A stretch of DNA of 64,000 nt. Source: Oculina patagonica. Taxonomy: Eukaryota. Below are positions 13,495 to 59,688 of the stretch, in pieces (positions within the stretch are counted from its first letter, which is position 1; the number at the start of each line of letters is the position of its first letter). The stretch covers positions 9,362,001 to 9,426,000 of the forward strand of contig NC_135761.1 of NCBI RefSeq assembly GCF_052425735.1, written 5' to 3'. Below the pieces are notes generated by a model, which was not told where the DNA came from, ran no database searches, and saw only the letters and a program-made list of their open reading frames with translations. Made by a program: the position numbers and the translations under genes.

Positions 13495-16033
<2,539 letters not shown>

Positions 16034-17045
16034 ACATACAATCGCTTTTTTCGACACGTGCTGATATTATCAAGTGAAAAATGCGTAATATTTTAATAAT
16101 ATCTGAAGAAGAATTTTTTAATACGACAGTGCGCGCTGTCAACTGATCGTCTTCCTAAATTCTCCTTTCAGGTCTCTGTACATATCTAAAGTATAAGTTG
16201 GGAGAATTTCAACGTATATCGATACAATTTCCTGATTTTCTTGACCTTCCTTCGATCATTCTCTAAATGATGATTATCAGAATCTTAAATGGCGCTATGT
16301 CACATGTCATGAAGGTGAAGATAACCTTTAGTTGTCTCAGTTAAAAGCGTCGGACTTAAAGTGAAAACAAAAGGAATTGTCCTTTAACTGAGATTTAGGA
16401 GTTGAGAGTTCGAGTCCTGGACCCGGGTGCATAAAAATACAAGAATGTGAGATTCGCATATAGTGCGAGGGTTCCCCGGCAAGGAAATCAGGGGAAAGAC
16501 AAAGAGGGAAAAACAAAACGGGAAACGCCAGAGAGAGAGCAGGGAAAAGCCCGTAACAGTATTTAGCAACCGGGCCCTGGACGGGGTCAGTGTACTCTCA
16601 CTGTGCTTCTCTCCTCCCAGGCGTGTACCATGTAAAACTTCACGGGTCCCTCGCTTGATTGGAAGATAACTTTGTGAGAGAGAAAATCCTCCCCTGAGGT
16701 CTTGTGGCATAGGTCTTTTAAATACTTTTGATAATAACCAGGAATGGAAATCCTCAATGGGTCAAGAAAATCTTGAAACTAGCATATTATTTTTTTTAAA
16801 AAAGTATACAAGAAAATGAGCTGTAATTAGCACCAGGGCGAGTCATACCATAAAAGAGATGACGCGGCATATTTAGCATATAAGCTTGCATCCTTTTGTA
16901 ATCAAACTTCATTCACACAATAAAGTTTGACTGAAGCTTTGTAATCCATTTGGAGTTTGATGTGAGTGTGTGAGAGAGGGCAAGTTTTTTCATGTAGATC
17001 TACAGCATAACAAAATTATAAATACGCCCCATTCCATAACCAAGT

Positions 17046-17288
17046 GGGAGGCGCGGTGGCCTAATGTTAGCGCGCTCGACTTCGAGTCGAACGGCCCGGG
17101 TTCGAGGCCTGGCCGGGGCGTTGCGTTATGTTCTTGGGCAAGACACTTTACTCTCACAGTGCCTCTCTCCACCCAGCTGTATAAATGGGTACCAGCGAAT
17201 TTACTGCTGGGGGGTAACCTTGCAATGGACTAGCATCCCATCCAGGGGAGAGTAGCAATGCTCGGACACAGACTTTACCTTTACCTTT
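17046..17288 (+). mobile_element. tRNA-derived CORE-like SINE
   Basis: A box TGGCCTAATG, B box GGTTCGAGGCC, CORE-like CTTGGGCAAGACACTTTACTCTCACAGTGCCTC..TGTATAAATGGG, (ACCTTT)n tail. Confidence 0.8.
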
Positions 17289-17717
17289 CCAGAACCAGTA
17301 TTCAGTTTGGTGTTGATTGTGTTTGGGTAAATGAAAATTAGTAGATTATTTTATCTTACCACATCCTTTCGACTTGGAAAATAAAATCCCTGCGAACGCG
17401 TACGGTCTTTAAACGAAAGGTCCAACCTCGTTTCCAGGGTGTCTCTCACCCTCCTCTCAAGAGCAAGAAAAGAGAGTGACAGGGGCCGGGAGCGAAAGAC
17501 CCTTTGGAACGTCACGAAAGGTCTGGATGGAGTGACAATAGAAAGCAAGGGACCGCGGACGAAAATGCTGCTAGTGTACGTAGGAGCTGGAGACAGCTCT
17601 AATCAGCCAAAAATAAAAATACAGAGACAAGATAAGCAAGGCTGACACTACGTAGAAATGAAAAAACTTTAACGGGACAACGACATGATAAGTCCAAACT
17701 GAAAGTCAAAAATGCAA

Positions 17718-17762
17718 ACTCTGGACAGCTGTTTCGACCTGATTGGGTCTCTTCAGCAGAGT
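17718..17762 (-). ncRNA. minimal type I hammerhead ribozyme (Penelope-like/retrozyme type)
   Basis: Minus strand reads ACTCTG-CTGAAGA-GACC caatca GGTC-GAAA-C AGCT G-TC-CAGAGT. It has a 6-bp stem I, the CUGANGA and GAAA core, a 4-bp stem II, a palindromic stem III loop and a GUC cleavage triplet. Confidence 0.85.
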
Positions 17763-17932
17763 GTATGCCGCACAGAATAGAACAACCAGCGCAAAGACAT
17801 GTATAAAGTGCTCGTGGTAATGACAATCCGGATGGGCTCAAATTCAAACACCCGCCCATTGATCATAGCCGCGTGACTATTACTCAATAGGTCAAGAATT
17901 CGAAATATCATGTGATTGTCAAAACGGAGAGT

Positions 17933-18641
17933 TAGACTGAAATGCAGTTGTCTCCCGCCTTCAGCCTACCCCCTCCCCCCCCGAGGGGTACTCTCATAGA
18001 GAAGGAACGGGGATGCTTGTCGAAAAATTTGAACTAAATCCTCAAGGAGACCAATCTGGGCGTGTCTGAAGCTTTTTAGACCACTACAAGATACCATTTT
18101 TTATGCTTGATCGGTCTTGACCGCCAACACAGTGTGTACGGCGTTTTTTATTTCTTCGCGTGCAATCCTAAACGAGACTTGGTCGGCTAAGAGCGGTTTT
18201 CACTTGAGTGTCGAAAGTTAATTGCGTTTGCTTTGGTTTTGCATTGCTACGCTTAGTGATTGACTTAAAAATCTCGCGCCACTTTCTCAGCCAATCAGAA
18301 CTAAAACCAAAACCAATCGTGACTCGCTCGCGCACGTTTTCCCGCGCTTCGTGCCGGCTACATGTATTTGCTTCGAGTTTTGATTGGTTCACTGGATTGT
18401 CTGTGTCCTTTGTCATTGGCCAGAGTAATTACTTTGGTTTTGGTTTTACGACACTCAATTGAAAACTGCTCTAAAATATTTGGCGTTTTGTCTTGAACAC
18501 CCAAAGCAAGACCAAATTCCGTAATTTACACCCATCAGTGAGCCCCGACCCTTTCATATAGGAGTCCCCCTCCCCCATTCACTCAAGAGCCTCACTCCCA
18601 GGAGAAGGCTGAGGGCGGGAGTCAACTGCTATTTCAGGCTA
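17933..18641. mobile_element. three nested MITEs
   Basis: Outer ~35-bp TIR TAGACTGAAATGCAGTTGTCTCCCGCCTTCAGCCT. Middle element ~17975-18575 is of the 5979 family. Inner element 18191-18471 (GAGCGGTTTTCA..TGAAAACTGCTC) has a TAA TSD (PIF/Harbinger-like). Confidence 0.7.
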
Positions 18642-19242
18642 ATTCGCGCCAGCGATTTGAGAGGAAAAAGAACAACCATCGTTGAGTTCGTGATCACAAC
18701 TAGCTTTTTCCAAGCTGAATTTAAAAAAAACTATTTTCTTTTTATACCCCTTTTCAAAAAAAAAAATTGGAGTACAAGTCATTGACAACATTGTCATAAC
18801 TGAGTTCTTATGCTAATCGTTTGGAAACATCTTGACCGTTTTTAATCTTCCTGTCACTTCTTTTGTTTGATCATGGAAATATGTCTTTACAAGGCGTCAC
18901 TTTTATTACCAGACTAGTGAATTATACAGTTCATCTGAAAGCTGAGGCGCGATTAGAAATCAAACGAATTTAATTTCTGGATTGATTCAAAGGCGGCAGA
19001 AAACTGCCGATCATTTACACAAGAGGTTAATATATTTATAATTTTTGTGCTTTAATGACAATGAGTCAAATGGACTATGTAAATTTTTGCTTTTCCATAG
19101 TTCTCGGAGTCAAAACAATTTACAATGCTGATTCTTTTTGAACTTTATGGTCATTTGAACTTCATGGTCATTTGTTCTTAAAAAGTGACCTCAGTTTCCA
19201 CTCTCGGTGGAAGCGAGACAATTGCCAAAAAGACAAAATAGC

Positions 19243-19335
19243 AATTAAGTATAAAAATTAGCGAAAAAAGCCACATGGTTTTACTCAAGATGAGTTCGAA
19301 ACGTCGTGGCTTACTTTCGCTAATTTTTATACTTA
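19243..19335. mobile_element. short inverted Penelope-like insertion with a degenerate hammerhead core
   Basis: 12-bp direct repeat AGACAAAATAGC (19231-19242, 19336-19347), ~30-bp inverted arms, and internal CTCAAGA..CGAAACGTC. Confidence 0.55.
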
Positions 19336-19527
19336 AGACAAAATAGCGTCCACTAAAATAAATTTAGCAAACAGATGATTAAGCGTCTTTATTTCTTTGG
19401 CACAAGGAAAGCTAAACGAAAGGAAATAGACCGTTCTTTATACATTAAATTTCATTTAAAGTCACGCTCCAGAATATACCAGTTTAAACCGTGAAATAAA
19501 TATACATTTGTTTCGGCTAAAACTGAC

Positions 19528-20463
19528 CTAATTCAAAAAGCATAAAAATTGCCTGAGCGTGTTCTTAACTTCTTGTCTAACTTCTCGGATCTTCCAGCAA
19601 TAAAGAATCGGGTTCAGAGATGAGTTCAAGCAAACAAGACTGGCTGTTAATGCCCAAATGACATCAAGAAATGGCGATGATCCGTGAATGGTAATCATAG
19701 CTATGACTATACTGTATGGCAAATAACAAACTACTAATGTGACTTGTACCCACACTGCGGTATAAACAGTCCTTCTGTATCGCGCTATATTCAGTGGAAT
19801 TTCTCCTCCGTTCGGTTGTCCGAGGTGACCATGTACTTCTACTTGATTTTGATGATGGCGGAGTGCAAGGAAGATTTTCGAGAAACAACAGGCTGAGATT
19901 AAAAGACAGAGTGTTATTAAGGTAAAGTTATAAATTTTTGGGATCGTGTACTTCCAAAACGACATTGAGGCAAAAGTGATGCTGGGGATCCAAAAGAAGA
20001 TAACTAACGCTCGAACTCGCCTCAAAGTTACAATTGTTCTATATCGCGGCCCAAGTAACAGAGCGAGCAGTCTGTCCACACTTATTGCCGTCATCGTTAG
20101 CAAAGAGACTGCGGACAAAGTTGTAAAACTGACTGTACAAATAGCTGCCGAGTAAAAACAAAGATCAGTTAAGCGGAGGTCTGTCACCAAGGACGTGGAA
20201 TACAGCGCAGTGCTTGGTTGTGTAATAAGACCAACTAAAAGATCAGTGATTGCCAGGCAGCGATACAAAAGTTTTGATGGCGGATGAAGGGAAGTCTCCT
20301 TGTGCAGCGCAACTAGAATAAGCGTATTACCAAGGATTGCAGTAAAAGAAAAGAAAAAGTTTATAGCAGAATTGAAAGTCCAATGCTTTCCCGATGAACG
20401 AGCTGTACAAAACAGAACTTGAATGGTTTTGTTGTATTCTTCATTAGCCGTAGAGTTGTCCAT
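19528..20463 (-). CDS. intronless class A (rhodopsin-like) orphan GPCR, melanocortin/adenosine-receptor-like, 311 aa
   Basis: Seven hydrophobic segments. GN (TM1), LAxxD (TM2), DRL for DRY (TM3), CYLP (TM6), NSxLNPILY (TM7). N-glycosylation sequons NST and NKT at the N-terminus. Confidence 0.92.
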   Translation of the reverse strand: MDNSTANEEYNKTIQVLFCTARSSGKHWTFNSAINFFFSFTAILGNTLILVALHKETSLHPPSKLLYRCLAITDLLVGLITQPSTALYSTSLVTDLRLTDLCFYSAAICTVSFTTLSAVSLLTMTAISVDRLLALLLGPRYRTIVTLRRVRALVIFFWIPSITFASMSFWKYTIPKIYNFTLITLCLLISACCFSKIFLALRHHQNQVEVHGHLGQPNGGEIPLNIARYRRTVYTAVWVQVTLVVCYLPYSIVIAMITIHGSSPFLDVIWALTASLVCLNSSLNPILYCWKIREVRQEVKNTLRQFLCFLN

Positions 20464-21180
20464 GCTAGCTGGGTTTTGCGTGTTATGAGAGATGAAAGTT
20501 ATCTTCGACTTTTCTGCTCACTGCATGTCATAGTTTAGCACTGAGGAAGTGGGCGTTGTCTTAGAATGACACATGTCAGTCAAGAACGGTTCTTGCGTAG
20601 AACAGGTTCAAACAGCCAATTGTCGCTACCAACAACCACTCAATACTTCTCAATGCGAGGCACTTGACAAGATTATTATACGATTTTGCAGGTAGCTAAA
20701 TACTCATGTCGTCTCTCCTTTGGCGAGGCATACGTTTCATTACGCGATTAATATCCCACTCTTAAAGCGGACGGTCGTAAATCTGTCAGTACCGGCCATA
20801 ACAGATGTTTTCATAAAAATGTATGTGCATTTTAATAAAGAAAGTCTAGTAAACTAGGTAAATATTTACTTTCTGCTCTTTGATCGCCTTTAGCTTTTGA
20901 GGAAAAACTTGTCACACATTTTAAAATGACAAAAACTTCCCATGCACATGTCATTCTTGCCTAAATAAAGAGAGCGAAAAAGGTCTGGAGAGGACTTTTT
21001 CTTTTTTTCGTTCTCTCTCTTTTTTGTAATTCGTCGTCACTGCAGAGTGATTGCAAAGAAAAAATTTGGCAACGTCTAGTCGAGCGACCGAGTAAAGTTT
21101 GTTATAGCTGGGACTTCTGCTTAAAACAATCAAACTAAGCTATCTAAAAAAACTCATGGTTTGTTACGGAATTAAACAAA

Positions 21181-21963
21181 TACCGTATTTTCACGATTAA
21201 ACGCCGAGTCTTCACGGTGATGTTGAAAATAGGCCCCTCAGTTTTTTTTTTTTTGAGATATAATAAGCTGTAGGTTTTCTAGTAAGATATATGTTTGTGA
21301 AAAATAATGTATAAAAACCCCTTGCTTAATGAACAACAGGCTCGAATAAACTGCAGGAGACAAATAAACGCCGGGTCTACCAGGCCAAGTTTGCAAATAA
21401 ACGCCGAAGCAGGGGGGATCCAGGATTTTTCAAAGGGGGTGGCTGTTAAACAATATTTTTGTATACCGTTATGTGGGGTGGGACAGGTTAGAAGTTTTTT
21501 GAAAGTAAGAATGTAAATCATTTTGGGTCGAGGCCATTTCATGGAGCCGTATGCTCCATCCCTAGGGGGGTCTGGGGGCGCCCCCCAATGAACGTTGAAG
21601 CCTCTTAGACGTGATTTCTGTACTGAGCAGTACAGCTGTCAATAGTATTAAACCACTTTTTCCATTGCCCCCCCGAAGGTGAAAGTGAGATGTGAAGCCC
21701 ACAGGAAGAATTAGCAGGCGGACTGGCGACGCGCGTGACGCCGGACGGCCACAAAAAGAAGAAAAAATCATCCAGCAGGCGGCGAATCTTTGGAAAAATG
21801 ACCGTCCACTTTGAACGGCCGCCTGACTATGAAAGGTGGATGGACATTTTCGTTATTTTCATTTCACTATGTTTATTCTTTCTGGGGATCAAGGGGGTGG
21901 CTAGCCACCCAATCCACCCCTGGATCCGCCCCTGCGAAGGCGTTTAATCGAGAAAATACGATA
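21181..21963. mobile_element. TA-flanked MITE with nested CAGGGG..CCCCTG element (21410-21934)
   Basis: Outer TIR TACCGTATTTTCACGATTAAACGCC / GGCGTTTAATCGAGAAAATACG. Inner element flanked by a CGAAG duplication. Confidence 0.65.
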
Positions 21964-22252
21964 GATTCCATAGTGCCGTCGATCTGTTCAGTTTTAGATC
22001 ACAAAAATGTCAAAGTGTGATAATCGTAAAACATAGTCAGTATATAGAGACACCAGTGCCGTGTTTTATACTGCATGACATAGACTTGCTCCAAGTCTAC
22101 CTCGTATAAATTGATGAGAGCCAGAAGCGATCGATAGCGAGCAAGCGAGTGTTTGAAAATTAAAAGGGCTATGCATGACATAAATGGAGAACACCTGCCA
22201 AATTTTAGTCGTGTTAATACATGGCTTGGGCTTCTTAATTTGTTCAGTCGAA

Positions 22253-22540
22253 TACCGTAAAATTCCGGTTATAAGCTCCCCCGCTTATAAGCCCTCCCGG
22301 TTATAAGCCCATCTACCTGGAAACAAAAAAATGCATCCGATTATAAGCCCCCCAGGATATATTACGCGTTTTAACTTAAAAACGTATTTTGATCAACACT
22401 GCCGTGGTTCGTTTCGAAACGTCTTTTTTTCCTCCGCTTATAAGCCCTCCCGGATATAAGCCCCTCCGCTCTTATAAGCCCACACAAAACCCCTTACGAA
22501 GTTGTATAAGCTCAGGGCTTATAACCGGAATTTTACGGTA
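22253..22540. mobile_element. TA-flanked MITE (TATAAGCCC family)
   Basis: TIR TACCGTAAAATTCCGGTTATAAGC / GCTTATAACCGGAATTTTACGGTA. Same family as 51531-51867. Confidence 0.85.
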
Positions 22541-23868
22541 TACAGGTGATAGAGATGTTTTGGTAAACGGACTATGCAAATGTTTGCTTTTCCTACGTTT
22601 GAGCTCAAAGAAATAAGTTTGCAAGTCGTGTGCAGACGTTTTATCAGAGAGGTTTGTCAGCTCATTTCCTCGACAGTAGTTTATATACCACTTATAGCGT
22701 CCACCCTCTACCGGATATCGGCTCCCAGTTATTCGGCGTCGTATACATGTACGCCCTTGGCCCCAAACCAGGATTTGATGATATGGGAATTGAAATAACT
22801 TTCGCGCATGCAAAGATGGCCTCGGCGCGGAGAGGAGGTGGGTGGGTAGCATACAATCGATGGGGGACGTTGTTGAGTGAATTGCCTTCTCTGTGGATAA
22901 AATAAAAACCCAAAACATAAAAAACATTAATAAGTTTTTTAAGGTTGAAGATGTTTTATTCTGAAAAATGGTCTGTGAATACTTATTTGTACGAAATAAT
23001 AGACTTCAATGGTTACAGTTTAATTTTTCTATGAAAAAAAAACTGTTTCAAGCAGGATAGGGTCAATAGCAGTGTGAAGTGTGTTATACTTTGTTGTTCA
23101 TTATATAGTTTTCTGAAGAGCTGCGGTAGGAAAATTACGAATATCTCGAGAGAAAAACACGGAAAATGAAGTAAATTAGTGAATACTTTTAAGCGTTCTT
23201 TTGTTTTTGGACTTTGGGAACATGTCTAAGTCCAGTAATTGTATGAACAATTATGACGAATGGATTCTCCTGATAACAAGTATGTTATCAGGTCTCTTGC
23301 TTTAAATTAAATCGCAAACTGGGAAACATATGCCTAGATTCCGAGTAGGGTCCGAAGAATGTTCAATTCTTAATATCCAATCACGTTAAGCACAAGCACT
23401 TCAAGAATCGTTCAATCTCGTCCCAAAACCCGCGCGGCTGACAAAGGGTAGCGCAGACTCTGGGTACGAGATTGGGAGTCGTCACGTGAGCTTCTGGCTA
23501 TCGCGATGTGTTACCTAGCAACATCTCTGTAAAAAATCGTGAGCTCAGTCCGAGTGTAAAGCTCAATATTGAAAGCAGAGGGCGTGACATCAAATACAAA
23601 ACAGAACAGTGAAAAATGTTGAGTGTAACTTTCTCGAGCAGGAATTCCTTCCCTTCTCGCGGGAGATTTATGCAGGATTTACGATTCTTGGTTTGGAACT
23701 GTTCAGTCGTCCAAAGTAGTTCTCAGGAACAGCAAGTTTAGTTTGCGTTGAAAAATACGTGCGTTGTTACATGACGTGCCTTATATATGTAGTAAGTACA
23801 AAAATAAACCAATCAAAAATTGAGCTTTAATTTGTGGAAAATTCACCGACAAGGAATGTTCGGACGCG

Positions 23869-26800
23869 TCAGGATAACGAACCATTCACGTGACCGTTCA
23901 CGTGACTATCCACACAGTCCCATGTTTCTAGAGAATCCTCGAAATCTTCAAGGTCCGTAATTTCTAGGTCGTCGAGACTCCTGTCCACTTTAAGGTCCTG
24001 ACACTGCTGATAAGTTGAAATTAACTCCAACATGTCAGACTCCGCCTGAAGGGAAAAAACAATAAGACAGTCAGCGTTTGAAGGAAGCACGATAAAGCGC
24101 CGATGAACCGCGCATTATGCAAAGTCCCAAATTATCTTCAGAGCTAGAGTAATGGAAATACGAAATAACACCTTCGAAACAACAATGTCAAGAGGGTAGG
24201 AACTATTCATAAAGAAAACAATGACATACAAATCGCATTTTAAAAAGTCAAGTTGCACAAACGCTGTAGCACTACTAGCTCGTCATTTTCCGTTCATCTA
24301 AAATTGTTTGTTCAATTAGGTGAATAACTTCGCAATCCATCGAATCGTAATGTTCTATTCACGTTGACTTTTCCTTTTTACGTGGATGCAGCAACCCGCA
24401 AAATAACATAACATGGGCAACTCTAAGATACAGACATCTTTTACGGCTTACGGTGCGGGTGTTTACAGCGTATAATTAAAACACCACTCTAAGCTGGACA
24501 CATTGAGTAGCTCCCTGCTGAACATTCCTTTAACCCATCTAACGTACATAGACAACAATGAATGTTGCGGCGGATACAGAGGAGAAAAATTGAGGCCCGA
24601 GCGGCAAAAAGGTGTTTCATTAAGAAATTTTATACTCCGGGCTCCCACGTTTTTCGCTGGGGTCCACCTTGTATGCATAGACTGCCTGCAAGTCTAGATC
24701 CACCTTAAAATGTCAACTTCAAAGGCATTCACTGTAATTATTTAAAGAAAATTATCAAAAAAGTCGATTACATCTAACCTGTGTAAATTGCATTTCGTCC
24801 ATTCCCTCTACAGTGAACCAGTGAAGAAACGCTCTCCTCTTGAACATAACTCTAAACTGCAGATTGAGTCTTCTAAATAGTTCTTGTATAGCTGTGTTAT
24901 TAGCTATAAAGGTTGCCGACATTTTCATTCCGTGCGGAGGCACGTTACAAACCGCAACTTTAGCATTATGTGGGATCCACTCGACAAAATTCCCGCAGTT
25001 TTTATCTTGAACCTTCGCCATCTGATCCTCAACTTCTTTCATCGATAGCTTTTTACCGCGAAACATCGCTGCGTAGGTAAGGTATCTGCCATTTCTTGGA
25101 TCACAGGCGATCATAACGTTTTTGGCGTCAAAAATTTGCTGAGTCAGCTCAGCTACTGTCAGATTACGAAATGTCTGTGACTGTCTACTGGTCAGCGGTG
25201 CAAACCCAGGCATGAAGAAATGAAGGCGAGGATAAGGAATCATGTTCACGGCCAATTTACGCATGTCCGCGTTTAACTGAAGAGAAAAATAAGAAATAAG
25301 ATTATCTGGAGGACCTTAGCTGTTAAAATGGGGGAGGGGGGAGGGGTGTTAGGCCAGTAATGTTTCTTGTCCCCGCCCGCTTCAAAAATCAACAGACGTT
25401 ACTTTCGCTTTGTACCAGTTCTTTAAGCACAACTGAAAATTATGTAAGGCATTACTTTTTCTGCGTTTTAACACAAACACAGGCCAATCGTTTAAAGCCT
25501 CGGTACGCTAAGTCCGTAGTGGATAGGTCAATTGCCTTGCAGGATTTCTTTGCCAGTTCGCTTCTGGAGAATTCGACGATGGAAGAAATAACAAATAACA
25601 AAAAAAAAGGCGCCCACCCGCTCGCTTTTTTTTTATGAAATCCGTACGAGAAACATTTTTTTTACTTGGCCTTAAAAGATAGAAAGGTTTTTAAGAATTT
25701 TATTGCGGGAACACTGAAGCTGTTTTTCGAATAAAGTGCCCTAGAAAAGCGGATGGAAATTGCATAAGTTTCCACATGATTTTCAGGCTTAGTATTATTA
25801 ATAGTATTATTAATAGTTTAGCATTATTAATAGTTTTTTTAGGTATTCTAATTAATGTCCTTAATTAGCCCACAAGGACTAAACACATCGACACCGAAAT
25901 AAAGTTTTTACTTACTTACTTCAGCATTCTTAACTCGCTGAATGGGCACTGAATCTCCTTCATGGTCAAAACGAATGCAAGTAAGCCAAGACAGAGCAAA
26001 ATTACCTGGGTCCGATTTTCAAATTTATTTCCTCTCCGGCGAACAAGTGCTAGCGATCACGTAGTAACCAGCCTAAAGACGTCCTACGTAAACTTTAATT
26101 CTCCTTACTAATTACCGTACTTTTATTTTAATGTTAGTTCTGAGAATAAGTGTACAGTGATCAGACAATATCCCTAATTAATGACTTCCTGCTTTCTATC
26201 ACCTGTCTGCTTGACATTGCATTGAGAATGTATGGAGAATTGAAATGTTGGTCACTCACCTGTCCAGGAAAACGAAGACAAGTAGTAACACCGCTCATGG
26301 TCGTCGATATAATGTGATTTAAATCTGAGTACGTTGTAGTTTCAAGTTTAAGCGTTCTAAAACAAATATCATACAGCGCTTCATTGTCGAACGAGAACAC
26401 TTCATCTGTGGTCTCTATCAACTGATGTACCGCCAGAGTGGCGTTATAAGGTTCAATAACAATCTCGGAGACTTTTGGTGACGGAAACACGCTGACTGCG
26501 CTGAGTATCCGGTCCGGGTACTCCTCTTGTAAATGGTAGAGTATCAGAGTGCCGAGCCCAGACCCTGTGCCGCCTCCAAGGGAATGCGCAACCTGGAAGC
26601 CCTGGATCGAGTCACATGACTCGGCTTCTTTTCTGACCGCATCCAAGACCTGTTCCAGAAGGTTACATCCGTTTGTGTAAAAACCTTTGGCCCAGTTGTT
26701 TCCTGCTCCGCTCTCGCCTGAGAAAGAGGAAATAAGTAACAGTTATAAGTACAATCTCGCTTTCCTGTTAAATTGAATACATACTTCTTCTTATTGAACG

Positions 26801-29626
26801 AGCTTAAAGGTCGTACTGAGGAACACTGGTCTGCGCAAAAACGATTGAGGGGCAATTTTCTCTTTAAGGACCCTACCCTGTATGGTTGGTGTAAGAAGTC
26901 GTAACTTCAGTACGATTATTGCGATATAAAGCCGGAGCCGCTCGGTATTTTGATCTGCTCAATCGAACTAAAGTATGGCCTCAAGCGTCCTCTGGGGTAC
27001 GAAGAGGTAGTAAGTAATCGAGCGAAGTTATCCTTGCAACATTGAACAGAGGAGCCTGGAGGGGTAAAATTGGAACTACGGTAGGATTTGGATCATTGGG
27101 ACTGGGGAGCACAAACAAGAAAATGGGATTCATTGGGACTGGGATTTAAGCCGAAATAGGCTGGGAAATGAGATTTATACCAAACTCACCCACTTTTGCA
27201 GGACAGGTCCAGTGTCAGTTCTCATTTCCCGAAGATTTTAGATTTGGACTACTTTTCGACGGAAAAGAGGGACCCCGTCAACTTCTTTGGCAAGGCACTT
27301 GTATGCGATTTAAGTGAAATTCCATAGTTTTCATATGTGGTAATAAAGCCTGTGTTTTCGTTGCGTTACGTTTAAATCCCATACTGAAATAAGCCAATCA
27401 GAGCGCGCCTTATACCTCTACACAAACTAACCATACAAAGGGTTCCAAAAGCTAACTCAACGCATACATACTAGTCATACTCGCCGTGAAGATGTGAAAG
27501 AATTCTTTTTATGCGTTTGTTTAGATATATTTAGATACATTGCTAGTTATTTATCTTGGCTAGTGATCGAGTACATAAGTGAAGGGATAAAAATAGCGAG
27601 TTTTAGCCCAACGTTACAAATTATTTTACAAACATTTGTTTATGTGATGCATGGAAGCGTTAAAACGAAGTGGCTCTAATTAACAATATCACAATGGTTA
27701 ATAAAGTTGGCAAAGAAAAGCTTATTATCCTGTACGTATCAATTAAAACACCAATTAAGCAATGAAAAATTCATTTCGTTTCGTCTTTAAGAAGGCATTA
27801 AAATTTCTCATTCCTTATACACATTTTGAGCCCAGTAGGAGATAAATCGCCACCCTCTGCCAGATTTATTAGTTGACTGTTTCTTTTACCAATGACTGTG
27901 AAATATTCGTTAAACAAACTTTTTTGGTTGGTGGAGCGTTGCAAACAATTTAAATCACTCGGCTTTGCTTTGTTAATTAGCGGGATTTTAACCAAAGACT
28001 CCATAGTGGTTCTCATTCATGCTCAATTAAGCATCTGCGCGTCCTATAATCCGCGGTGAGTTTTGGAATAAATTTGGAATAAATTTGCCGACCAGCCGCA
28101 AGTGACACGCGACGGGGAAATAAGTTAATAAAACAGCACGTTTTGTTAGACTAGAACATACGACCAGTTTCCTTAGAAGTATTTTTTTCGAGGCGGTGTA
28201 ATATCACATAAGGGGGTCATGAACTGTTCCACATAAACTGGAATGTTCTACAAAACGCCATTTTGTTCCGTGTGCGCTAAACAAAAATGCAAATTGCTGC
28301 AAAGTTAGTGATGCTTATACGAAACAAATGAACGCACTTGCTGGAGGTTGACAGCTGAACAATGCTAAACACTTCAGTAAAAACCGCTAATATTGATGCT
28401 TTTATCAAAATAATTTTTATGTTTACTTGGTTTTTCCAATAAAATTTAGTGGAATGGAAAAGGAATGTATGTTTACAAAGCAATTTGGCGCTAGGCACCG
28501 TGAGAAACACGGAAAAAAGAAAACTACACATTATTAAGCCATGCGTTTAATGAGGAAACCGAATTGAAAATTAAACTTTGCACATTACTCTAAACAGGAA
28601 AGAATTGTCGAGGCCATATACTGACTGAGAGTTTATGCATACTGTAATAATTTAAATGGCTAAAAAAATGAAGTCTTAAAACAAAACTGGATAAACAGCG
28701 CTTTGAAAAAACAAAATAAAATAGACCACGGGATAATTATATCAGAAAAAAATCTTCTGCAGCGAAAGCGGAAAATTTTTGGTCAGAGTATCGGAGAGTG
28801 GTCCTAAAAGATGAACTCGCAGTTTAATTCGAATTCTAACTTTTAATGCAACGTATATTACAGCTGTAGATTTAATTATTATGAAAATACTCATTTAGAA
28901 GATCATGTGTAACTGCCATTTTAAACTACCTTTGTTACACGAGGTAAATACCAACCTCTTAAATACGAGAATGGCTAACAGCAAAGAAAAACAGTATTAA
29001 GCCAAAGTTCTTTAAAGATGATAAATAAACCCCTTTGACCAAGCGTTAATTAAATAACTTATTTACATAACGTAAACTTCTACCAGACTTACCGAAAACA
29101 AAATTATCGGGTCGAAAGACCTTTCCAAACGGCGCGGAGCGAAGCGAATCCATCGTGCCCGATTCCAAATCAACGAGGACATTACGCGGTACGTATCTAT
29201 TGCCTGCGAGTGAAAAAACATTTAAACCGCAAATTAAACGCATTTTTATTCGAAATTCTACAGTGTGTTCACAGTAAGAATTCAACCAAGATAAGCAGGG
29301 AACTTAATGAGAGCGTTTCTACATTACTATTCATAACTCACCGGCACCCTCGGCAAAATAAACATCAATTTTCTCCAATTGCGAATTGCAACTTCCATTA
29401 TAGCGTCCCTCTTCGTCTATTCCATGCTCCGCGCAAAGAATTTCCCAAAGCTAAGATAAGAGCACACATTCACGGTTACCGAGACGTGTAAATTGACCCA
29501 CAGACAAAAGAAATAACGCCACTAGAAATCTCGTAGCTACAAGCAAGTTAGTGCCATAACATTAACCACCTTGTAGCCAATTTGGTTTCCGCACTGTCCG
29601 ACTTGTACGTTTATAATCTCCCGCAT
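23869..29626 (-). CDS. divergent beta-tubulin (tub2), 469 aa
   Basis: Exons 29570-29626, 29342-29450, 29093-29203, 26260-26717, 24779-25276, 23869-24045. Same intron positions and phases as the other five copies, with no stops or frameshifts. [24 protein letters not shown] and the beta-type K252 are retained. Confidence 0.93.
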
Positions 29627-31063
29627 TACACAGGCAGAAAGGAGGTGTAGTTCCTTCGCCCGAACCCACAACTCGGGTTCATTTCGTTGCGGCAAACGGC
29701 CACAATTTACCCCCGTTCGACTGGACTATTGATAAATCTGCGTCTCGAGTGAGACATCAATTATTCATGCTTTGCTGCGAATCCTTTCAAAAACCGTGCG
29801 GGAACCAAAACAGGAACCAGATACCGGTAGGTCTGTTCAAGGTTCTTGAAAACCTCGCTTCCGCGCCAAAAGCACTTCCGGCTGGTTGTTGACACATGAT
29901 CGTAGGTCTTGAGACTGTATTTTACTGAGGAATTAATTTAAAAAAGTGATAAATAAAATTAGCAGTTTATTTCTTATATTTCTTCGGGTAGTTTGTTTTG
30001 TGAATCTGTTTTAACTGCCCTCTGTTAATAAAATGATAGCTGAAAAGCACAAGCAGCCTTTTGCGCCACTTTTATCACTTGTGACATGGTTGTGATTGGT
30101 CAAAAGACTTGTCATACTTTATTGGGAAACAATGACTACTAGCAGTTTCTAAAGCCTTGTTTCCATATATTCGCAGCTAATCGCACCGGATCGCAGGTCA
30201 AAACGTTCTGTGATCATAAGACGCACCTGCGATCTTTGGCGTGATCGTACAGCTTACATGTAGCTTGTCTCCATTTTATCAAACCGTTGCGTTGCACTGT
30301 TGTCAGTTTTGCATTTATCTCTGTAAGTTCGCAAATGAACCGTTAAGCTTGGGCTGTAAGTAGAGGCGAAAAATATGAACAGCACATCTGATAGGAAGAA
30401 CAGATAAGTCAACCAAGTCGCCTCGCCCCGATTGTTCAAAGGTGGATAAAGCTATCCACCGGCACTATCCAGTGTTATGTCGACACTTATCTACTGGATA
30501 GCGTTATCCACCCTTTAAACAACAGGGCCCTGGGTTGCAAAAGATTCAGTGAGGGGACCGCGGAAAACCAATAGGTGAACTCTGCGCGGTGACAGATTTG
30601 GGACACAAGTAAAGGTTTGAGTTTCAATTTCTTAAGAGGGAAAAAAGAATCCCTAATAAATGAAGCAAACATAACACTGCGTGCAATAGTAGCTGTAAAA
30701 TTCCATGCTGTAGCGTCGCTCAACTATCAGCCATTTCCTTTTGTTCTGATTTTGATGAACAACTGACACGCTGGGAGCATTCTATTCCTAGTGCTTAGAT
30801 GTTAACTTTATTGGTGTAAAGCTAGAAACAGCCGAAGTCGTCGGTGACTCTACGGGGACCAGAACTGCTCAAGAAAAGCCTCTGGAACACAACCTGCTTG
30901 ATTAAATGCAAGTTATCGCTAATATACCTCTGTTAGCCAGAAAAACGGAGACCACCACAACAAAGTAACACAAATTGGGTTTTAATGAACATCTTTGGAG
31001 TTAAAATAATTAATACGGTTTAAATAGATTAATCTTTTTAAAAAACAACAAGACTGAGAAGCT

Positions 31064-36262
<5,199 letters not shown>

Positions 36263-37660
36263 TTTTGATTCCCTCGACCTTGACTAGCAACAGGGCGCTA
36301 TCCCGCTACAACTGATCTGCGTTTTGTGATTTCGGCAACTCGTCAGCTGATTGTGACGTTTTTTGACAGTGTAACCATGACGACATTGTAAACAGCACTT
36401 CGCGCTGGAGCGCGGGCTCAGTAGTATAGCGTTTTCTGCTCAAAATTCTGCTTCAGCAACAAAATTCTGCTTGCTCGGTGCTGACTGTGATCACCCGCTC
36501 AGGCCGAAGCGAAAGAAGAGGACCGGCTGACCCGGCACATCGGCAAGCGAGACACCCACGAATGTGTCCACTCGCAGAAAAGCAGAACTGGGGAGGGGCC
36601 TGGTAAAATGTATCCCGCAAACCTTTGATTCGGGTCAGATGTCTTCATGAGTTGCCTTTGAATAGCATTGTTAACAAAAAGCGCGCCGTTATCCTTAAGA
36701 ATGGAATGAAAATCAGAAGAAATGTGCAATGCGATGTTCCTTTCCAACGAGTAATCAAAGCTCCTTTTGTAGCTCTGGAAGTACCCCAGAATAATATTTC
36801 GAAATAAGATAAAAAAAACCTGTTTTCCTTACTAACGTGTACCTTTTCTGCGCTGTGCAATACACAACAACATGAATGTATTAGGACTCTATTTGTAACA
36901 GGACCAAAGTTCGAGTACACTTTTTCTTTGATGGCTTGATCAGGGCTTCGCACGCGCCAGGGTAGGATCCGGACCAGACTTGTATAAAACGTGGGTCCCT
37001 GTGATTAAATAACGGGGAAGCTGAGTGAAAAAAAGAACCTGCCGGAAAAAAAATAATCATAAAAGGCACTTTTCCGCCGAAAAGGTAGGTGCCTAGTTCT
37101 CCTCGGCCAGTATTGCATAGCCTCGTATCTTTGATGGTTAGTTATTAATCAGACTAATCAGAACACTTCGCCACCTTTCCGGCGAAATCAGGCAGAAGAG
37201 AGAGAGCATGGGATGAAGGCTGGAGCTGGCAGAATTGCTGGGAAATTGCGCACTGTGATGTATGACTATGTTCCAAAATTGCGGGAACTTCACATGAATG
37301 GTTCGCTCTCTTCGACAGAACAAGAGGACAACCGACAGGAACGATGCCCTTAGCCCCGGGAACAATAGCAATACGTCTTTTTTGTCTTTTTACTCTAGAG
37401 GACCAGTAGAATTTCAAGCTTTCGAGAGCTGCTACACTACTGGAAAATCCACCAGCTGTTTCAGTCGGCTGCATACACAATCAATACAGTGCAGGGGCGG
37501 ATGTACACAGGTTATGTACATCCAGCCTTTCCATCAAGTTACACGGCGTCCCTTTCAATACGTCCTTTTTGTCTTTTCACTTCTATGAAATAAAATTCAC
37601 TGGTCTTATTCTCAGTATTCTGGACAGATACCAGGAAAATATACTGCTAACTGTACTTTT

Positions 37661-38054
37661 AAGGTCGGGACACACTAGGCGACAAGTCGCAGCGACAGGT
37701 CTCTGCAACAAGTCGCTCCATGTGTACTACTTCAAAATAAGTCACTGCGACAAGGCGCTTGTTTGTTGCTCACACAGCGAATTTTGAAGAGTGGGAATGT
37801 GAGTAGTTTTCCAATTTAATATGGCAAAAATGCGTGACGCTCTCTCATTGGTTAATTTATATTTTGTCGCAGAAGTGTGCACACGCTGCAACAACGCTCC
37901 TGTCGCTCATTTTGTCGCTGCGATCAGTCGAACGAATTCAAACTGGTTTGAATCCGTACAACTGATTGCAGCGAGAAAGATTGTCGCAAAAATGCACCAT
38001 GTCACACGAGGCAAAAAATGTCGCAGCGACTTGTCGCCTAGTGTGTCCCGTTTT
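37661..38054. mobile_element. MITE (TGTCGC-repeat family)
   Basis: TIR CGGGACACACTAGGCGACAAGTCGC / GCGACTTGTCGCCTAGTGTGTCCCG. Confidence 0.8.
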
Positions 38055-38385
38055 AAACTCTGGGAGCAGCCCTGTTCTCCAATCAGAGATATTCAATATA
38101 TCTGTGACTGAATTCAGTTAGTAGCATATCTCAAAACCGTTCTTCCGTTACAATCAAGCTGCAAGTCAACAGGAATTCGATTGTATGTCAATTTTGAAGC
38201 TGGACAAAACAAATATTATTCATGCATAGGTGCGTCTAAACTTGAAATAAAATTTATTCTTATTGAAGCGAGAACCAATTCTCGTATGCTGAACTTCTCT
38301 CTCCAATTTCACGATTTTGTACACGGATACATTAGGGTCAAGAACTTTGAGAAAAGTGTATCATGCTATTGTTCGGTTTTAGAAG

Positions 38386-38826
38386 TACCGTACGTTTTTA
38401 TTCGATTAAGCGCCCATCCTCGAATAAGCGCCCACCTCGAATAAGCGCCCACCCTGTAGGCAGGAAAAGTTAATAAGCGCCCAGCCTCGAATAAGCGCCC
38501 ACCCCCACCCTCCTAAAAAGAGGGCAAAAGAGGAATTTTGATTATTGTTGAAGTTGAGATTGAAATTGACTAAGTTCTTCAAAGAGACTACCCCGAAAAC
38601 CGAGTTTTTTAAAAGTGTTTTACCGCTGAAACTTTCATTGAACATTTAAAATTCAGCTTTAGTACAGCTTTACGTTAAGTTATTATACATTATTTTCTTG
38701 CAAAATAAACGTACTACTTGCTAAAAATGGTAAAAATGTAATAAGCGCCCAGCCTCGAATAAGCGCTCACCCTCAAGGTCCAAAAAATTAATAAGCGCCC
38801 AGGGCGCTTAATCGAATAAATACGGT
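38386..38826. mobile_element. MITE with AATAAGCGCCC repeats
   Basis: TIR TACCGTA..TTTATTCGATTAAGCGCCC / GGGCGCTTAATCGAATAAATACGGT. Confidence 0.75.
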
Positions 38827-39137
38827 TTTAAGGACAGTGTGACTTTTGGGCCTGCATTGGAGCAAGGTTTAACCAAGATCAATCAAACACAGATACTGCA
38901 GGACTCTGTTGTCTTTTATTGACCAATAGACTTAAATATAATTACACACGCGGAAAGCCGGGCTTCTTAATTTACTACTGACCTAACATAGGTCATGCTT
39001 TATTCTTCAAGAGAAAATTAGAACTGGAGAAAAAACTCATTACAGCTTAAAGTGAACAGCTTCTTTTGCCAGTTTATTAGCTACGAAAGATCAAACAGTT
39101 TTCCTGCGAATTCATTCTCGGTTTGTCAAGTTATTTA

Positions 39138-43927
<4,790 letters not shown>

Positions 43928-44013
43928 CTTTGAAAGTTTTAGCGAACGTTGTGGGCTCGACTTTCCTGTGTCTTTGAGTTTGCAATATGTTGCTCCGGGA
44001 GATTGCGGCGCGG

Positions 44014-44096
44014 TTTATAGCCAATGACTAATTTATTCAATTCTTTCTTTTGCATACAAAAGACCTTTATTATACAGTAATCGCCTCATGACGTCA
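44014..44096 (-). promoter_or_regulatory. tub4 core promoter: TATAAA, adjacent CCAAT, CRE (TGACGTCA)
   Basis: TTTATA 44014-44019, CCAAT 44021-44025, TGACGTCA 44089-44096. TATA and CRE are conserved upstream of tub6 (59778-59783, 59855-59862). Confidence 0.55.
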
Positions 44097-46436: not shown

Positions 46437-51461
<5,025 letters not shown>

Positions 51462-51530
51462 TTAAGCGAACGTTGTGGGCTCGACTTTCCTGTGTGTTTG
51501 AGTTTGCTATATGTCGCTGCGGGAGGTTTA

Positions 51531-51867
51531 TATAGTAGAATTCCGGTTATAAGCCCTGGGCTTATACAACTTCGTAAGGGGTTTTTGGTGGGCTTATTAG
51601 CGGAGGGGCTTATATCCGGGAGGGCTTATAAGCGGAATGAAAAAAAACGTTTCGAAACGAGCCTCGGGAGTGTTGATCGAAATACGATTTTAAGTTAGAA
51701 ACGCGCAAAAAGCAACATTTAGCCCTGTTCAGTACTGTCATCCGGTAGAGGGGGGCTTATATCCGGGGTGGCTTATAATCGGATGTATTTTTTTGTTTCC
51801 AGGTTGATGGGCCTATAACCGGGGGGGGGCTTATAAGCGGGGGGCTTATAACCGGAATTTTACGGTA
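51531..51867. mobile_element. TATAAGCCC-family MITE inserted at the tub5 TATA box
   Basis: Same TIR as 22253-22540. The empty site GGTTTATAGCCAA is present upstream of tub4 and tub6. Confidence 0.85.
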
Positions 51868-52493
51868 GAGCCAATGACTAATTTATTCAATTCTTCTTTT
51901 GCATACAAAATTTACGTGCTTTCAATCACGCGACTTCGCAAAAGCCACCGAAATTGAAAGCTGCGTTTTTCTAGCAAAATAGCAGTTAAACTTCAAGAAC
52001 TTGATTTTTAAGCTTCTTTTATTTTGACCAAAATCAATTTATGCCATTCAAGTGGTTTGAGCGTATTTTATGTAAGATTCGGAACAAAATAAATATTTGC
52101 AAGCCCAGACAGGAATTTGTTTATGCATGTGGATCAAAAAAGAAATGACGTAATCAGGGAAATTTCGGTTCAATTCTCCAAACTTCTTGACTGGTGCAAA
52201 ACTCGGACTCGAGTCGTCGGATGACGCTAAACGGAGAAATACAACAGGATGGCCTCAGTCTACTTTTTATTTTGGCGTGAAATGGACTCCCTTTTATCGT
52301 CATTCAACTGGTTTGGGTTTATTTTATTCAACATTTGGAACAAAAAAAATATTTGCATGCCTAAGCATGAATTTATTCGGCAAGGCATGTGGCATAAGGC
52401 AAGAGATGATGCGATAAGGGAAATTCAGCTCACGCACACTCCGTGACTCACGCAAACACGACTTGTGTGCATTCTCGTACCTCGAGTCTTCGT

Positions 52494-56084: not shown

Positions 56085-59688
<3,604 letters not shown>

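What the first reader, a model, noticed from the sequence alone, without database searches (positions are those of the whole stretch)
23869..29626. Intact, highly divergent beta-tubulin with a rewired motor-binding surface and atypical tail, embedded among five near-identical copies
Seen: tub2 keeps all five intron positions, MREI, QCGNQ, GGGTGSG and K252. Relative to its neighbours it has E407Q, E410Q, D417E and E421T around helix H12, a changed M-loop (SRQSQTFRN vs SRGSQQYRA), F167V, Y200F, P70S, D177E, T178I and a 1-aa insertion (RGKKLSM). The EGEFxxx poly-E tail is replaced by a longer Asp-rich tail ending [12 protein letters not shown] (12-bp tandem duplication). Known: E410, D417 and E421 are kinesin-binding residues mutated in human TUBB3/TUBB2B disease; EGEFxxx is the axonemal motif; poly-E tails carry glutamylation and glycylation; 167/198/200 line the benzimidazole site. 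Inference: a specialised isotype that escaped homogenisation and builds microtubules with different motor, modification and drug behaviour, perhaps in one cell type.
Basis: partly seen in the sequence, partly recalled or inferred. Interest (0 to 1): 0.8.

Follow-up and report, generated by a model that had tools for sequence, protein, structure and literature searches.

The report
Ancient divergent coral beta-tubulin isotype
This is a real, intact and transcribed beta-tubulin gene of the stony coral Oculina patagonica that belongs to an old, strongly conserved but unstudied branch of beta-tubulins shared by stony corals and sea anemones, with a changed outer surface and an unusual conserved tail; what cell structure it builds is still unknown.

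Summary
On the minus strand at 29626-23869 lies a six-exon, 469-aa beta-tubulin. Its five GT..AG introns sit at the same positions and phases as in five canonical neighbours. It is 68% identical to them.

My gene model is 100% identical to the annotated Oculina patagonica protein KAL9974870.1 / XP_078365036.1.

- **Expression:** all five introns appear as spliced joints in RNA-run contigs of three organism labels.
- **Constraint:** one related transcript differs at 28 synonymous sites and 1 non-synonymous site. Against genomic orthologs dN/dS is 0.02-0.05.
- **Age:** full-length orthologs exist in Acropora, Orbicella, Stylophora, Pocillopora and Porites, and in the anemones Actinia, Actinostola and Nematostella. 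They form one clade (100/100) on a long stem. In Actinia the gene also follows a canonical beta-tubulin.

So this is an old tandem paralog, not a copy that recently escaped homogenisation. The neighbours are alike in protein only (dS 0.11-0.41).

Nucleotide loops are untouched. Clade-fixed changes cluster in H3, H4, H12 and the H1-S2 loop. All three axonemal marks are missing. The tail carries a conserved acidic motif with one tryptophan.

Best reading: a specialised non-axonemal isotype. Cell type, motor behaviour and drug behaviour remain untested. I found no paper on the clade.

The parts
29570..29626 (-). exon 1 (codons 1-19, [19 protein letters not shown]; start ATG at 29626)
   Evidence: The intron 1 joint 29570/29450 appears in RNA contigs of X1, X3 and X13.
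29342..29450 (-). exon 2 (H1-S2 loop region; ends in phase 1)
   Evidence: Joints 29450/29570 and 29341/29202 appear in RNA contigs.
29093..29203 (-). exon 3 (codons about 57-93)
   Evidence: Joints 29202/29341 and 29092/26716 appear in RNA contigs.
26260..26717 (-). exon 4 (T3 to T7: [17 protein letters not shown]5 loop, residues 167/198/200)
   Evidence: Pfam PF00091 Tubulin, E 1.7e-37. Joints appear.
24779..25276 (-). exon 5 (K252, M-loop, one-residue insertion, H11, start of H12 with E407Q and E410Q)
   Evidence: Pfam PF03953 Tubulin_C, E 5.2e-42. Best PDB matches are beta-tubulin chains at E 2e-81. Joints appear.
23869..24045 (-). exon 6 (rest of H12 and the 41-residue non-canonical tail with the conserved DLE[DE]FEDSLE[TS]W[DE]C motif; stop TGA at 23871-23869)
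   Evidence: The tail has dN/dS 0.04-0.10 among corals. The joint 24044/24778 appears in X1, X3 and X13.
23881..23906 (-). 12-bp tandem repeat, 2.2 copies, encoding HVNG-HVNG near the C-terminus
   Evidence: Tandem Repeats Finder. Similar HxNG repeats occur in the Orbicella and Porites orthologs.
13495..59688 (.). surrounding array of five canonical beta-tubulin genes (446-447 aa, each with EGEF and a poly-Glu tail), the paralogs used for comparison

Best explanation
tub2 is a functional beta-tubulin isotype of Oculina patagonica. It arose by an ancient tandem duplication of a canonical beta-tubulin, before stony corals and sea anemones separated. It went through a burst of change and has been held almost constant since.

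It most likely still binds GTP, pairs with alpha-tubulin and enters microtubules, because every nucleotide-binding loop and the beta-specific K252 are intact. The microtubules it builds would be non-axonemal and would differ in two places:
- their side-to-side contacts (M-loop, H3, H1-S2 loop);
- the outer ridge that motors and MAPs read (H4, H11-H12 loop, and H12 with E407, E421 and, in corals, E410 neutralised).

The usual poly-glutamate tail, which is the substrate for glutamylation and glycylation, is replaced by a conserved acidic, hydrophobic motif with a single tryptophan. That motif looks like a docking site for a partner protein.

Shown here: gene structure, transcription and splicing, purifying selection, the age and membership of the clade, and where the changes lie.

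Inferred, not shown: polymerisation, altered motor/MAP/modification behaviour, and the cell type. My leading guess for the cell type is the microtubule cage of developing stinging cells or another stable cytoplasmic array.
For: **Intact gene.** The model has canonical splice sites and is identical to the NCBI annotation.

**Transcription.** All five introns appear as spliced joints in contigs of RNA runs from three organism labels, including small runs of 82-340 million letters. That argues for more than trace expression.

**Constraint.**
- The X13 transcript shows 28 synonymous and 1 non-synonymous difference over exons 4-5: pN/pS 0.01, P = 7e-18 under neutrality.
- Pairwise dN/dS is 0.02-0.05 at dS 0.8-2.3 against genomic orthologs.
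- Core dN/dS is 0.02-0.035, against 0.002-0.012 for the canonical neighbour over the same species pairs. Tail dN/dS is 0.04-0.10.

**Age.**
- Orthologs at 90-94% identity occur in Orbicella, Stylophora, Pocillopora, Porites and Acropora, and at 74-76% in Actinostola, Actinia and Nematostella. All share the tail motif.
- In the maximum-likelihood tree the 13 clade rows form one group at 100/100, on a stem of 0.48 changes per site with short inner branches.
- The ortholog follows a canonical beta-tubulin on the same strand in other corals and in Actinia.

**Where the changes lie.**
- 24 positions that are invariant in 14 other metazoan beta-tubulins are changed in all 10 clade members.
- Clade-fixed changes cluster in H3 (5), H4 (5), H12 (5) and the H1-S2 loop (4). 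T4, T7, H6 and S7 have none.

**Axonemal marks.** EGEF, T55-G56-G57 and the Glu run are present in all five neighbours and absent in tub2. The criteria are as set out for Tetrahymena beta-like tubulins in PMC3382179.
Against: - No protein-level or cell-level data exist: polymerisation, motor binding, modification and drug response were not tested.
- The cell type is unknown. The single-cell tables I could reach were cut off or not held.
- The structure model puts the tail below pLDDT 50, so a folded or docking tail is not shown.
- Several changes sit at lateral contacts, so a role outside the lattice cannot be excluded.
- The RNA runs are labelled 'RNA?' by guess. The spliced joints, not the labels, carry the argument.
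Confidence: 0.7

Rival explanations
1. A young, species-specific copy that recently escaped gene conversion in a homogenised array and is drifting fast.
For: It sits inside an array of five copies with 97-99% identical proteins. Another note of this scan (s1-271124) suggests conversion-like patches among those copies.
Against: - Orthologs with the same 24 diagnostic substitutions and the same tail motif occur across Scleractinia and Actiniaria.
- The clade has 100/100 support and short inner branches.
- The tandem position is conserved in Actinia.
- The canonical copies differ by dS 0.11-0.41.
Confidence: 0.02
2. A decaying or relaxed duplicate (a pseudogene in the making) that happens still to be open.
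For: It is 32% divergent from its neighbours. It has lost the tail motifs and changed several disease-associated H12 residues.
Against: - It is intact in every species examined.
- It is spliced and transcribed.
- dN/dS is 0.01-0.05.
- Even the tail is under purifying selection.
Confidence: 0.01
3. A tubulin that no longer serves as an ordinary lattice subunit. It might be an end-capping, nucleating or sequestering factor, or a partner of a matching divergent alpha-tubulin in a non-microtubule polymer.
For: Fixed changes lie in lateral-contact elements: H3 (5), the H1-S2 loop (4), and in corals M-loop positions G277Q and Y281F. The long stem branch suggests a change of function.
Against: - Nucleotide loops T1, T4 and T7, and K252, are unchanged.
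- The protein is 68% identical to canonical beta-tubulin over the whole core.
- Known isotypes with altered M-loop and H3 still build microtubules (knowledge of the family; Tetrahymena BLTs, PMC3382179).
Confidence: 0.1
4. A sperm or cilium-specific axonemal isotype.
For: Testis- or cilium-specific divergent beta-tubulins are common in animals (knowledge of the family; insect survey PMC2880298, listed).
Against: - It lacks EGEF, T55-G56-G57 and a Glu run, while all five neighbours keep them.
- It is present in many RNA runs of three studies, not only in a few, which does not look seasonal (weak evidence).
Confidence: 0.07

Closest known systems
Canonical metazoan beta-tubulin (the five neighbours; vertebrate TUBB2B/TUBB4B in PDB)
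   Same: Same fold and domains (PF00091 and PF03953). Same five intron positions. MREI, GQCGNQ, GGGTGSG and K252 are present. PDB beta-tubulin chains match exon 5 at E 2e-81.
   Different: - 68% identity.
- 24 otherwise invariant positions are changed.
- One-residue insertion after G319.
- H12 has lost E407, E421 and, in corals, E410.
- No EGEF or poly-Glu tail; instead a longer conserved tail with one Trp.
Tetrahymena non-canonical beta-like tubulins BLT1/BLT4 (PMC3382179)
   Same: Longer beta-tubulins that lack the EGEF axoneme motif, the residue 55-57 outer-dynein-arm motif and the EEEE modification site. They carry M-loop and H3 substitutions and serve restricted non-axonemal arrays.
   Different: Independent origin in a ciliate. 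No shared tail motif. The function of tub2 has not been localised.
Divergent animal isotypes such as vertebrate TUBB1, C. elegans MEC-7 and TBB-6, Drosophila betaTub60D/65B/97EF
   Same: Lineage-restricted, more divergent paralogs used in particular cell types or conditions, with isotype-specific tails (knowledge of the family; reviews PMC8987236 and PMC2880298, listed).
   Different: tub2 groups with none of the divergent bilaterian sequences in my tree, apart from a weakly supported, probably long-branch attachment to scallop and filarial sequences. It is restricted, as far as sampled, to Hexacorallia. Its tail is conserved over a much deeper split than is usual for tails.
Database orthologs: Orbicella XP_020602908.1, Stylophora XP_022779496.1, Acropora millepora XP_029184363.2, Actinia tenebrosa XP_031560286.1, Nematostella XP_032231891.2
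   Same: Same clade, same diagnostic substitutions and same tail motif. The Oculina entry XP_078365036.1 is this gene itself.
   Different: They are named only 'tubulin beta chain-like', 'tubulin beta-2A chain-like' or 'hypothetical protein' by automatic annotation. None of these accessions occurs in the paper library searched.

Membership tests
beta-tubulin (tubulin/FtsZ superfamily) | Tubulin GTPase domain plus tubulin C-terminal domain | tested here: met
   PF00091 at E 1.7e-37 on exon 4 and PF03953 at E 5.2e-42 on exon 5. The AlphaFold model has pTM 0.78 with the tubulin order of strands and helices.
beta-tubulin (tubulin/FtsZ superfamily) | Nucleotide-binding signatures GQCGNQ (T1), GAGNNWAKG (T3), GGGTGSG (T4) and N204/N226/Y222 | tested here: met
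   All are present and invariant in alignment A3.
beta-tubulin (tubulin/FtsZ superfamily) | Beta rather than alpha: MREI N-terminus, K252 in place of the alpha catalytic Glu, short S9-S10 loop, closest solved chains are beta | tested here: met
   MREI and K252 are present. The top 60 PDB matches are all beta-tubulin chains. The S9-S10 loop length was not examined separately.
beta-tubulin (tubulin/FtsZ superfamily) | Forms GTP-dependent heterodimers with alpha-tubulin and polymerises | not testable with these tools
   Needs recombinant protein.
axonemal beta-tubulin | C-terminal axoneme motif EGEF followed by three acidic residues | tested here: not met
   Absent from tub2 and from all clade members. 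Present in all five neighbours.
axonemal beta-tubulin | Residues 55-57 (S/T)-G-(G/A), the outer-dynein-arm motif as stated in PMC3382179 | tested here: not met
   tub2 has A-G-N and the anemone orthologs have A-E-D or S-D-H. The neighbours have T-G-G.
axonemal beta-tubulin | Run of glutamates in the tail for polyglutamylation and polyglycylation | tested here: not met
   The tail after H12 has 4 Glu and 8 Asp, and no two Glu are adjacent.
hexacorallian divergent beta-tubulin clade (defined here) | Monophyly with the coral and anemone orthologs | tested here: met
   100/100 support for the 13 rows. Corals are 97/95 as sister to the anemones.
hexacorallian divergent beta-tubulin clade (defined here) | Shared diagnostic substitutions (H6N, H105F, E108N, E111N, K154H, P220T, F260Y, V313Y/F, E407Q, E421T/R, Y425C and others) and the tail motif DSLE-x-W-[DE] | tested here: met
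   The full combination occurs in no other retrieved protein.
hexacorallian divergent beta-tubulin clade (defined here) | Tandem position next to a canonical beta-tubulin | tested here: met
   Seen in the Oculina window, in three other coral contig sets and in Actinia tenebrosa. Nematostella could not be fetched.
pseudogene | Stops, frameshifts, broken splice sites, dN/dS near 1, no mature transcript | tested here: not met
   None of these was found.
short docking motifs in the tail (Atg8/LC3-interacting region: acidic stretch then W-x-x-[LIV]; kinesin-light-chain W-acidic motif L/M-D/E-W-D/E) | Pattern match conserved across orthologs; binding to the partner | tested here: inconclusive
   W-x-x-[LIV] preceded by acidic residues holds in 11 of 12 distinct orthologs (WDCV, WDCL, WECV, WDCI, WDSL; the exception is L007 with WDCE). 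The kinesin-light-chain pattern is missed by one inserted residue (L-E-T-W-D). Such short patterns are common by chance, and no binding was tested.

The most novel reading that the evidence does not exclude
The conserved tail (about 30 residues ending in ...[14 protein letters not shown][VLI]) may be a built-in adaptor. In that reading it is a docking motif on the microtubule surface itself that recruits one specific partner, for example an Atg8/GABARAP-type protein, a motor light chain or a cnidarian-specific MAP. It would mark a dedicated microtubule population peculiar to hexacorals, for example the cage around developing stinging-cell capsules or spirocysts. This would be isotype-encoded cargo or partner selection in place of the usual code of tail modifications.
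Probability: 0.12. Interest if true: 0.75.

Novelty: new member of a known kind. Interest (0 to 1): 0.45.

Why it matters
Beta-tubulin is among the most conserved animal proteins. Most ideas about how isotypes and tail modifications tune microtubules come from bilaterians and ciliates.

Here is a beta-tubulin kept since before corals and sea anemones split. It evolves several times faster than its canonical neighbour yet remains under strong constraint. It has also swapped the modifiable poly-Glu tail for a conserved motif.

If it marks a cell-type-specific microtubule array, it gives a natural experiment on the tubulin code in a non-bilaterian. Its unique tail would also serve as an epitope for following that array. 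An ortholog exists in Nematostella, so the question can be tested directly by knockout and tagging.

It does not change how tubulins are understood in general. Divergent isotypes are a known phenomenon, and the gene is already in RefSeq under an automatic name.

Tried and rejected
- **Full-length query.** I could not hand the spliced 469-aa protein to the search tools as one reference, so I worked through exon references. The exon 5 search of the 50% representatives gave only exon-level ORF fragments.
- **Fragment alignment A1.** An alignment of exon pieces on a canonical backbone misplaced exon 2 and the tail, and I dropped it. The reduced alignment A2 worked and led to the Acropora full-length protein.
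- **Tail-only search.** A search with P0235 residues 405-464 found only 3 proteins because of the word index, so it says little about the clade's range.
- **First AlphaFold run.** With 24 sequences it was unusable (pLDDT 45.7). The 70-sequence run folded the core but left the tail below 50, so I make no structural claim about the tail.
- **ESM Atlas search of the tail.** It returned only unnamed short tubulin-tail-like clusters.
- **Nematostella locus.** It could not be fetched by exact look-up.
- **Literature.** Seven searches for this clade, for cnidocyte-, spirocyte-, neuron- or testis-specific beta-tubulins in cnidarians, and for the accessions found nothing specific. Mentions in the Aurelia, Nematostella apical-organ and Twist papers concern other tubulins.
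- **Single-cell tables.** The Stylophora atlas supplements are not held in full. The Astrangia marker table is cut after the first clusters and shows only the canonical neighbours.
- **Region scans.** Rfam and repeat scans of 23000-30500 found nothing.
- **Scallop and Loa loa grouping.** I considered the weak grouping of the clade with these sequences in the tree and reject it as a relationship. Support is 93/74 and 89/85, below the star threshold, and all are long branches.


Full report
**What is there.**

Six beta-tubulin genes lie in the window. One is on the plus strand (13495-16033) and five are on the minus strand. The gene in question runs from the ATG at 29626 to the stop at 23869.

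I built its model from open frames and splice signals. It has six exons: 29626-29570, 29450-29342, 29203-29093, 26717-26260, 25276-24779 and 24045-23869. The five GT..AG introns are 119, 138, 2375, 983 and 733 bases long. The coding sequence is 1410 nt, giving 469 residues, with no internal stop. Intron positions and phases match those of all five neighbours.

The model is 100% identical over its full length to the NCBI protein 'hypothetical protein ACROYT_G011968 [Oculina patagonica]', KAL9974870.1 / XP_078365036.1. This identifies the genome and gives independent support for the gene model. Another agent of this scan reached the same organism (s1-262701).

tub2 is 67.7-67.9% identical to each neighbour. 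MREI, GQCGNQ, GGGTGSG and K252 are present. By canonical numbering I confirm the following:
- P70S, F167V, D177E, T178I, Y200F, E407Q, E410Q, D417E and E421T;
- the M-loop change (SRQSQTFRN against SRGSQQYRA);
- the one-residue insertion (RGKKLSM against RG-RMSM).

The tail lacks EGEF and any Glu run. It is 22-23 residues longer than in the neighbours and ends in [11 protein letters not shown], encoded by a 12-bp unit repeated 2.2 times at 23881-23906.

One point needs correcting. The neighbours are 97-99% identical as proteins but 92-97% in coding DNA, with dS of 0.11-0.41. Purifying selection alone could therefore explain why their proteins are alike. I did not test for gene conversion.

**Is it alive?**

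I laid contigs of three RNA runs and the reads of a fourth on 23750-29700. All five predicted introns came back as exact joints:
- the joints skipping 733, 983, 2375 and 119 bases appear in the contig runs X1, X3 and X13;
- the joint skipping 138 bases appears in X3 and X13.

The fourth run (X22, poly-A raw reads) laid only 2 reads and showed no joint.

The three contig runs carry three different organism labels. The run types are guessed ('RNA?'), but spliced joints can only come from RNA. The transcript was assembled even in runs of 82-340 million letters from several studies. I read this as more than trace expression in ordinary samples; that is an inference.

The X13 transcript comes from a close relative. 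Of the 32 base differences from the window in exons 4 and 5, 29 are listed. Of those, 28 are synonymous and one is V357M. That gives pN/pS of 0.01, and a probability of 7e-18 of seeing at most one non-synonymous change under neutrality.

**Orthologs and age.**

An exhaustive profile search with exon 5 found exon-level ORFs at 91% and 84% identity, then a drop to the roughly 73% typical of canonical tubulins. Their contigs are ENA coral-associated assemblies. They let me build complete six-exon orthologs in three further taxa: L001/L002, L005/L006 and L007. L001/L002 are near-identical to the Acropora protein.

Against these orthologs tub2 is 89-92% identical, with dS of 0.9-2.3 and dN/dS of 0.024-0.046.

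Over exons 4-5 and the same species pairs:

| Gene or region | dN/dS |
|---|---|
| tub2, exons 4-5 | 0.02-0.035 |
| canonical neighbour, exons 4-5 | 0.002-0.012 |
| tub2 tail (codons 412-456) | 0.04-0.10 |

So tub2 evolves a few times faster than its neighbour yet is still strongly constrained, and the tail is constrained too.

A profile of exon pieces then reached full-length database proteins:

| Group | Species | Identity to tub2 |
|---|---|---|
| Stony corals | Orbicella faveolata | 94% |
| | Stylophora pistillata | 93% |
| | Pocillopora meandrina | 92% |
| | Porites lobata, Porites lutea | about 90% |
| | four Acropora species | about 90% |
| | Desmophyllum pertusum | fragments only |
| Sea anemones | Actinostola sp. 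| 76% |
| | Actinia tenebrosa | 75% |
| | Nematostella vectensis | 74% |

All carry the same tail core, ...YQQC[QE]D[LM]K...[DE]SLE[TAS]W[DE][CS]... .

In a maximum-likelihood tree of 38 beta-tubulins (LG+C20, careful search) the 13 clade rows form one group at 100/100. The stem is 0.48 changes per site. Corals (97/95) are sister to the anemones, and inner branches are short. The weak attachment of this long stem to scallop and filarial sequences (below the star threshold) is most likely long-branch attraction.

In the other coral contigs and in Actinia tenebrosa the ortholog lies directly downstream of a 446-aa canonical beta-tubulin on the same strand. In Actinia the boundaries of exons 4, 5 and 6 fall at the same residues.

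The duplication is therefore an old tandem event that predates the split of Scleractinia and Actiniaria. It was followed by a burst of change and then by stasis. This contradicts the picture of a copy that recently escaped homogenisation.

**Where the protein differs.**

In all 10 clade members, 24 positions differ from a residue that is invariant in 14 other metazoan beta-tubulins. They are, in canonical numbering: H6N, D26, L42, R46K, A63S, Q94E, H105F, E108N, A110C, E111N, V119, C129, L130I, I152L, K154H, P220T, F260Y, V313Y/F, G369A, G400E, E407Q, N414, E421T/R and Y425C.

I mapped clade-fixed changes onto the secondary-structure elements of the model:
- most changed: H3 (5), H4 (5), H12 (5), the H1-S2 loop (4), the H11-H12 loop (3) and H5 (3);
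- unchanged: T4, T7, H6, S3 and S7.

By established knowledge of the tubulin fold, H3, the H1-S2 loop and the M-loop make the side-to-side contacts between protofilaments. H12, with the H11-H12 loop, forms the outer ridge read by kinesins, dynein and many MAPs.

E407Q and the loss of E421 are universal. E410Q is coral-only. D417E is found only in Oculina and Acropora, and it is conservative. F200 and the loss of F167 are universal, and E198 is kept.

**Axonemal marks.**

All five neighbours carry EGEF plus acidic residues, T55-G56-G57 and a Glu run. tub2 has none of them: residues 55-57 are A-G-N, and the 41-residue tail has 4 Glu and 8 Asp with no two Glu adjacent. The same three criteria were used to argue a non-axonemal role for the Tetrahymena beta-like tubulins, which are the closest analogy in the literature (PMC3382179).

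**The tail.**

A second AlphaFold run with 70 sequences folded the core (mean pLDDT 72.9, pTM 0.78). It left residues 434-469 below 50, with only weak helical hints. The tail is thus probably flexible on its own.

Its conservation across corals and anemones points to a short binding motif. The segment with acidic residues followed by W-x-x-[LIV] fits the general pattern of Atg8/LC3-interacting regions in 11 of 12 orthologs. It misses the kinesin-light-chain W-acidic pattern by one residue. These are pattern matches only, and I treat them as leads.

**What it most likely does.**

My best reading (0.7) is a functional, non-axonemal beta-tubulin isotype. It would enter microtubules with altered lateral contacts, a less acidic motor and MAP ridge, and a docking motif in place of a modifiable poly-Glu tail. 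It would be used for a particular array.

I could not establish which array. Cnidarians have conspicuous specialised cytoplasmic arrays, notably the microtubule cage around growing stinging-cell capsules and threads. Those depend on microtubule regulators in Nematostella (PMC11193195). That makes cnidocytes, including the hexacoral-specific spirocytes, my first guess, but nothing here ties the gene to them.

The rivals are a non-lattice role (0.1), an axonemal or sperm isotype (0.07), recent escape from homogenisation (0.02) and a decaying copy (0.01). They are weighed in their own sections.

**Known or new?**

The gene and its orthologs are in RefSeq and GenBank under automatic names. I found no paper that describes this clade, its tail or its expression. 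The library is limited to open texts.

Divergent, lineage-restricted beta-tubulin isotypes are a well-known kind, so I class this as a new member of a known kind. Its unusual points are its age and the conserved non-acidic-run tail. The scan has also noted a second 'intact but highly divergent beta-tubulin' on another piece of this genome (s1-319906). I could not compare the two.

**Limits.**

- There is no information at the protein, cell or tissue level.
- The range of the clade outside Hexacorallia was not tested.
- Organism names for the ENA contigs were not given. L001/L002 are called Acropora-like because their protein is near-identical to the Acropora cervicornis protein.
- dS values above 1 are saturated, so the dN/dS values against distant corals are approximate. 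The close comparison (X13) does not have this problem.

Noticed in passing
window 25143-26140 (intron 4 of tub2, with the first bin reaching into exon 5): Stretches of this region match abundant RNA-run contigs in all three organisms. Word depth reaches 299 in X1 and 8751 in X13 (bin 25143-25341). Many contigs run on into unrelated sequence at loose ends. This looks like an interspersed repeat or an independent transcript rather than intron retention. No Rfam family and no internal repeat was found there.
   Followed up: partly
L009:798-3371 (ENA ERZ23499561); proteins P0002, P0093, P0165-P0167: A more divergent relative of the clade, known from exons 4-5 only. It has the diagnostic F260Y, V313Y and E407Q but lacks the one-residue insertion, reads HWYMEEG, and sits on a long branch (0.15) beside Oculina. 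It may be a second paralog in some coral, or a fast-evolving ortholog.
   Followed up: partly
window 13495-59688: The five canonical copies fall into dS tiers. Copies at 43927, 51450 and 59688 differ by dS 0.11-0.14. The copy at 36262 differs from those at 43927 and 59688 by 0.31, and from the one at 51450 by 0.40. The plus-strand copy at 13495 differs from all four by about 0.40-0.41. One long intron (1.8-3.2 kb) sits at intron 3 in the 36262 copy and in tub2, but at intron 4 in the three youngest copies.
   Followed up: partly
L001:13305-19671, L002:13319-19339, L005:20378-20519: In the Acropora-like and one other coral contig set, a histone gene cluster (H1 linker histone in L002; H2A-, H2B-, H3- and H4-type ORFs) lies a few kb downstream of the tub2 ortholog. 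In the Oculina window the downstream neighbour is a 311-aa intronless ORF (19528-20463, minus strand). The 3' side of the synteny block therefore differs.
   Followed up: no
P0322 (Orbicella XP_020602904.1, 249 aa), P0321 (Acropora cervicornis KAK2560803.1, 202 aa), P0320 and P0336 (Desmophyllum): Several genomes carry extra partial gene models of this clade on the same contig as the full-length gene. They are either split models or additional partial copies.
   Followed up: no
L012:23115-24590 (Actinia tenebrosa): A third tubulin gene (375-aa model, 98% identical to canonical over exon 4) lies downstream of the Actinia ortholog. The divergent gene is thus embedded between canonical copies there too.
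   Followed up: partly
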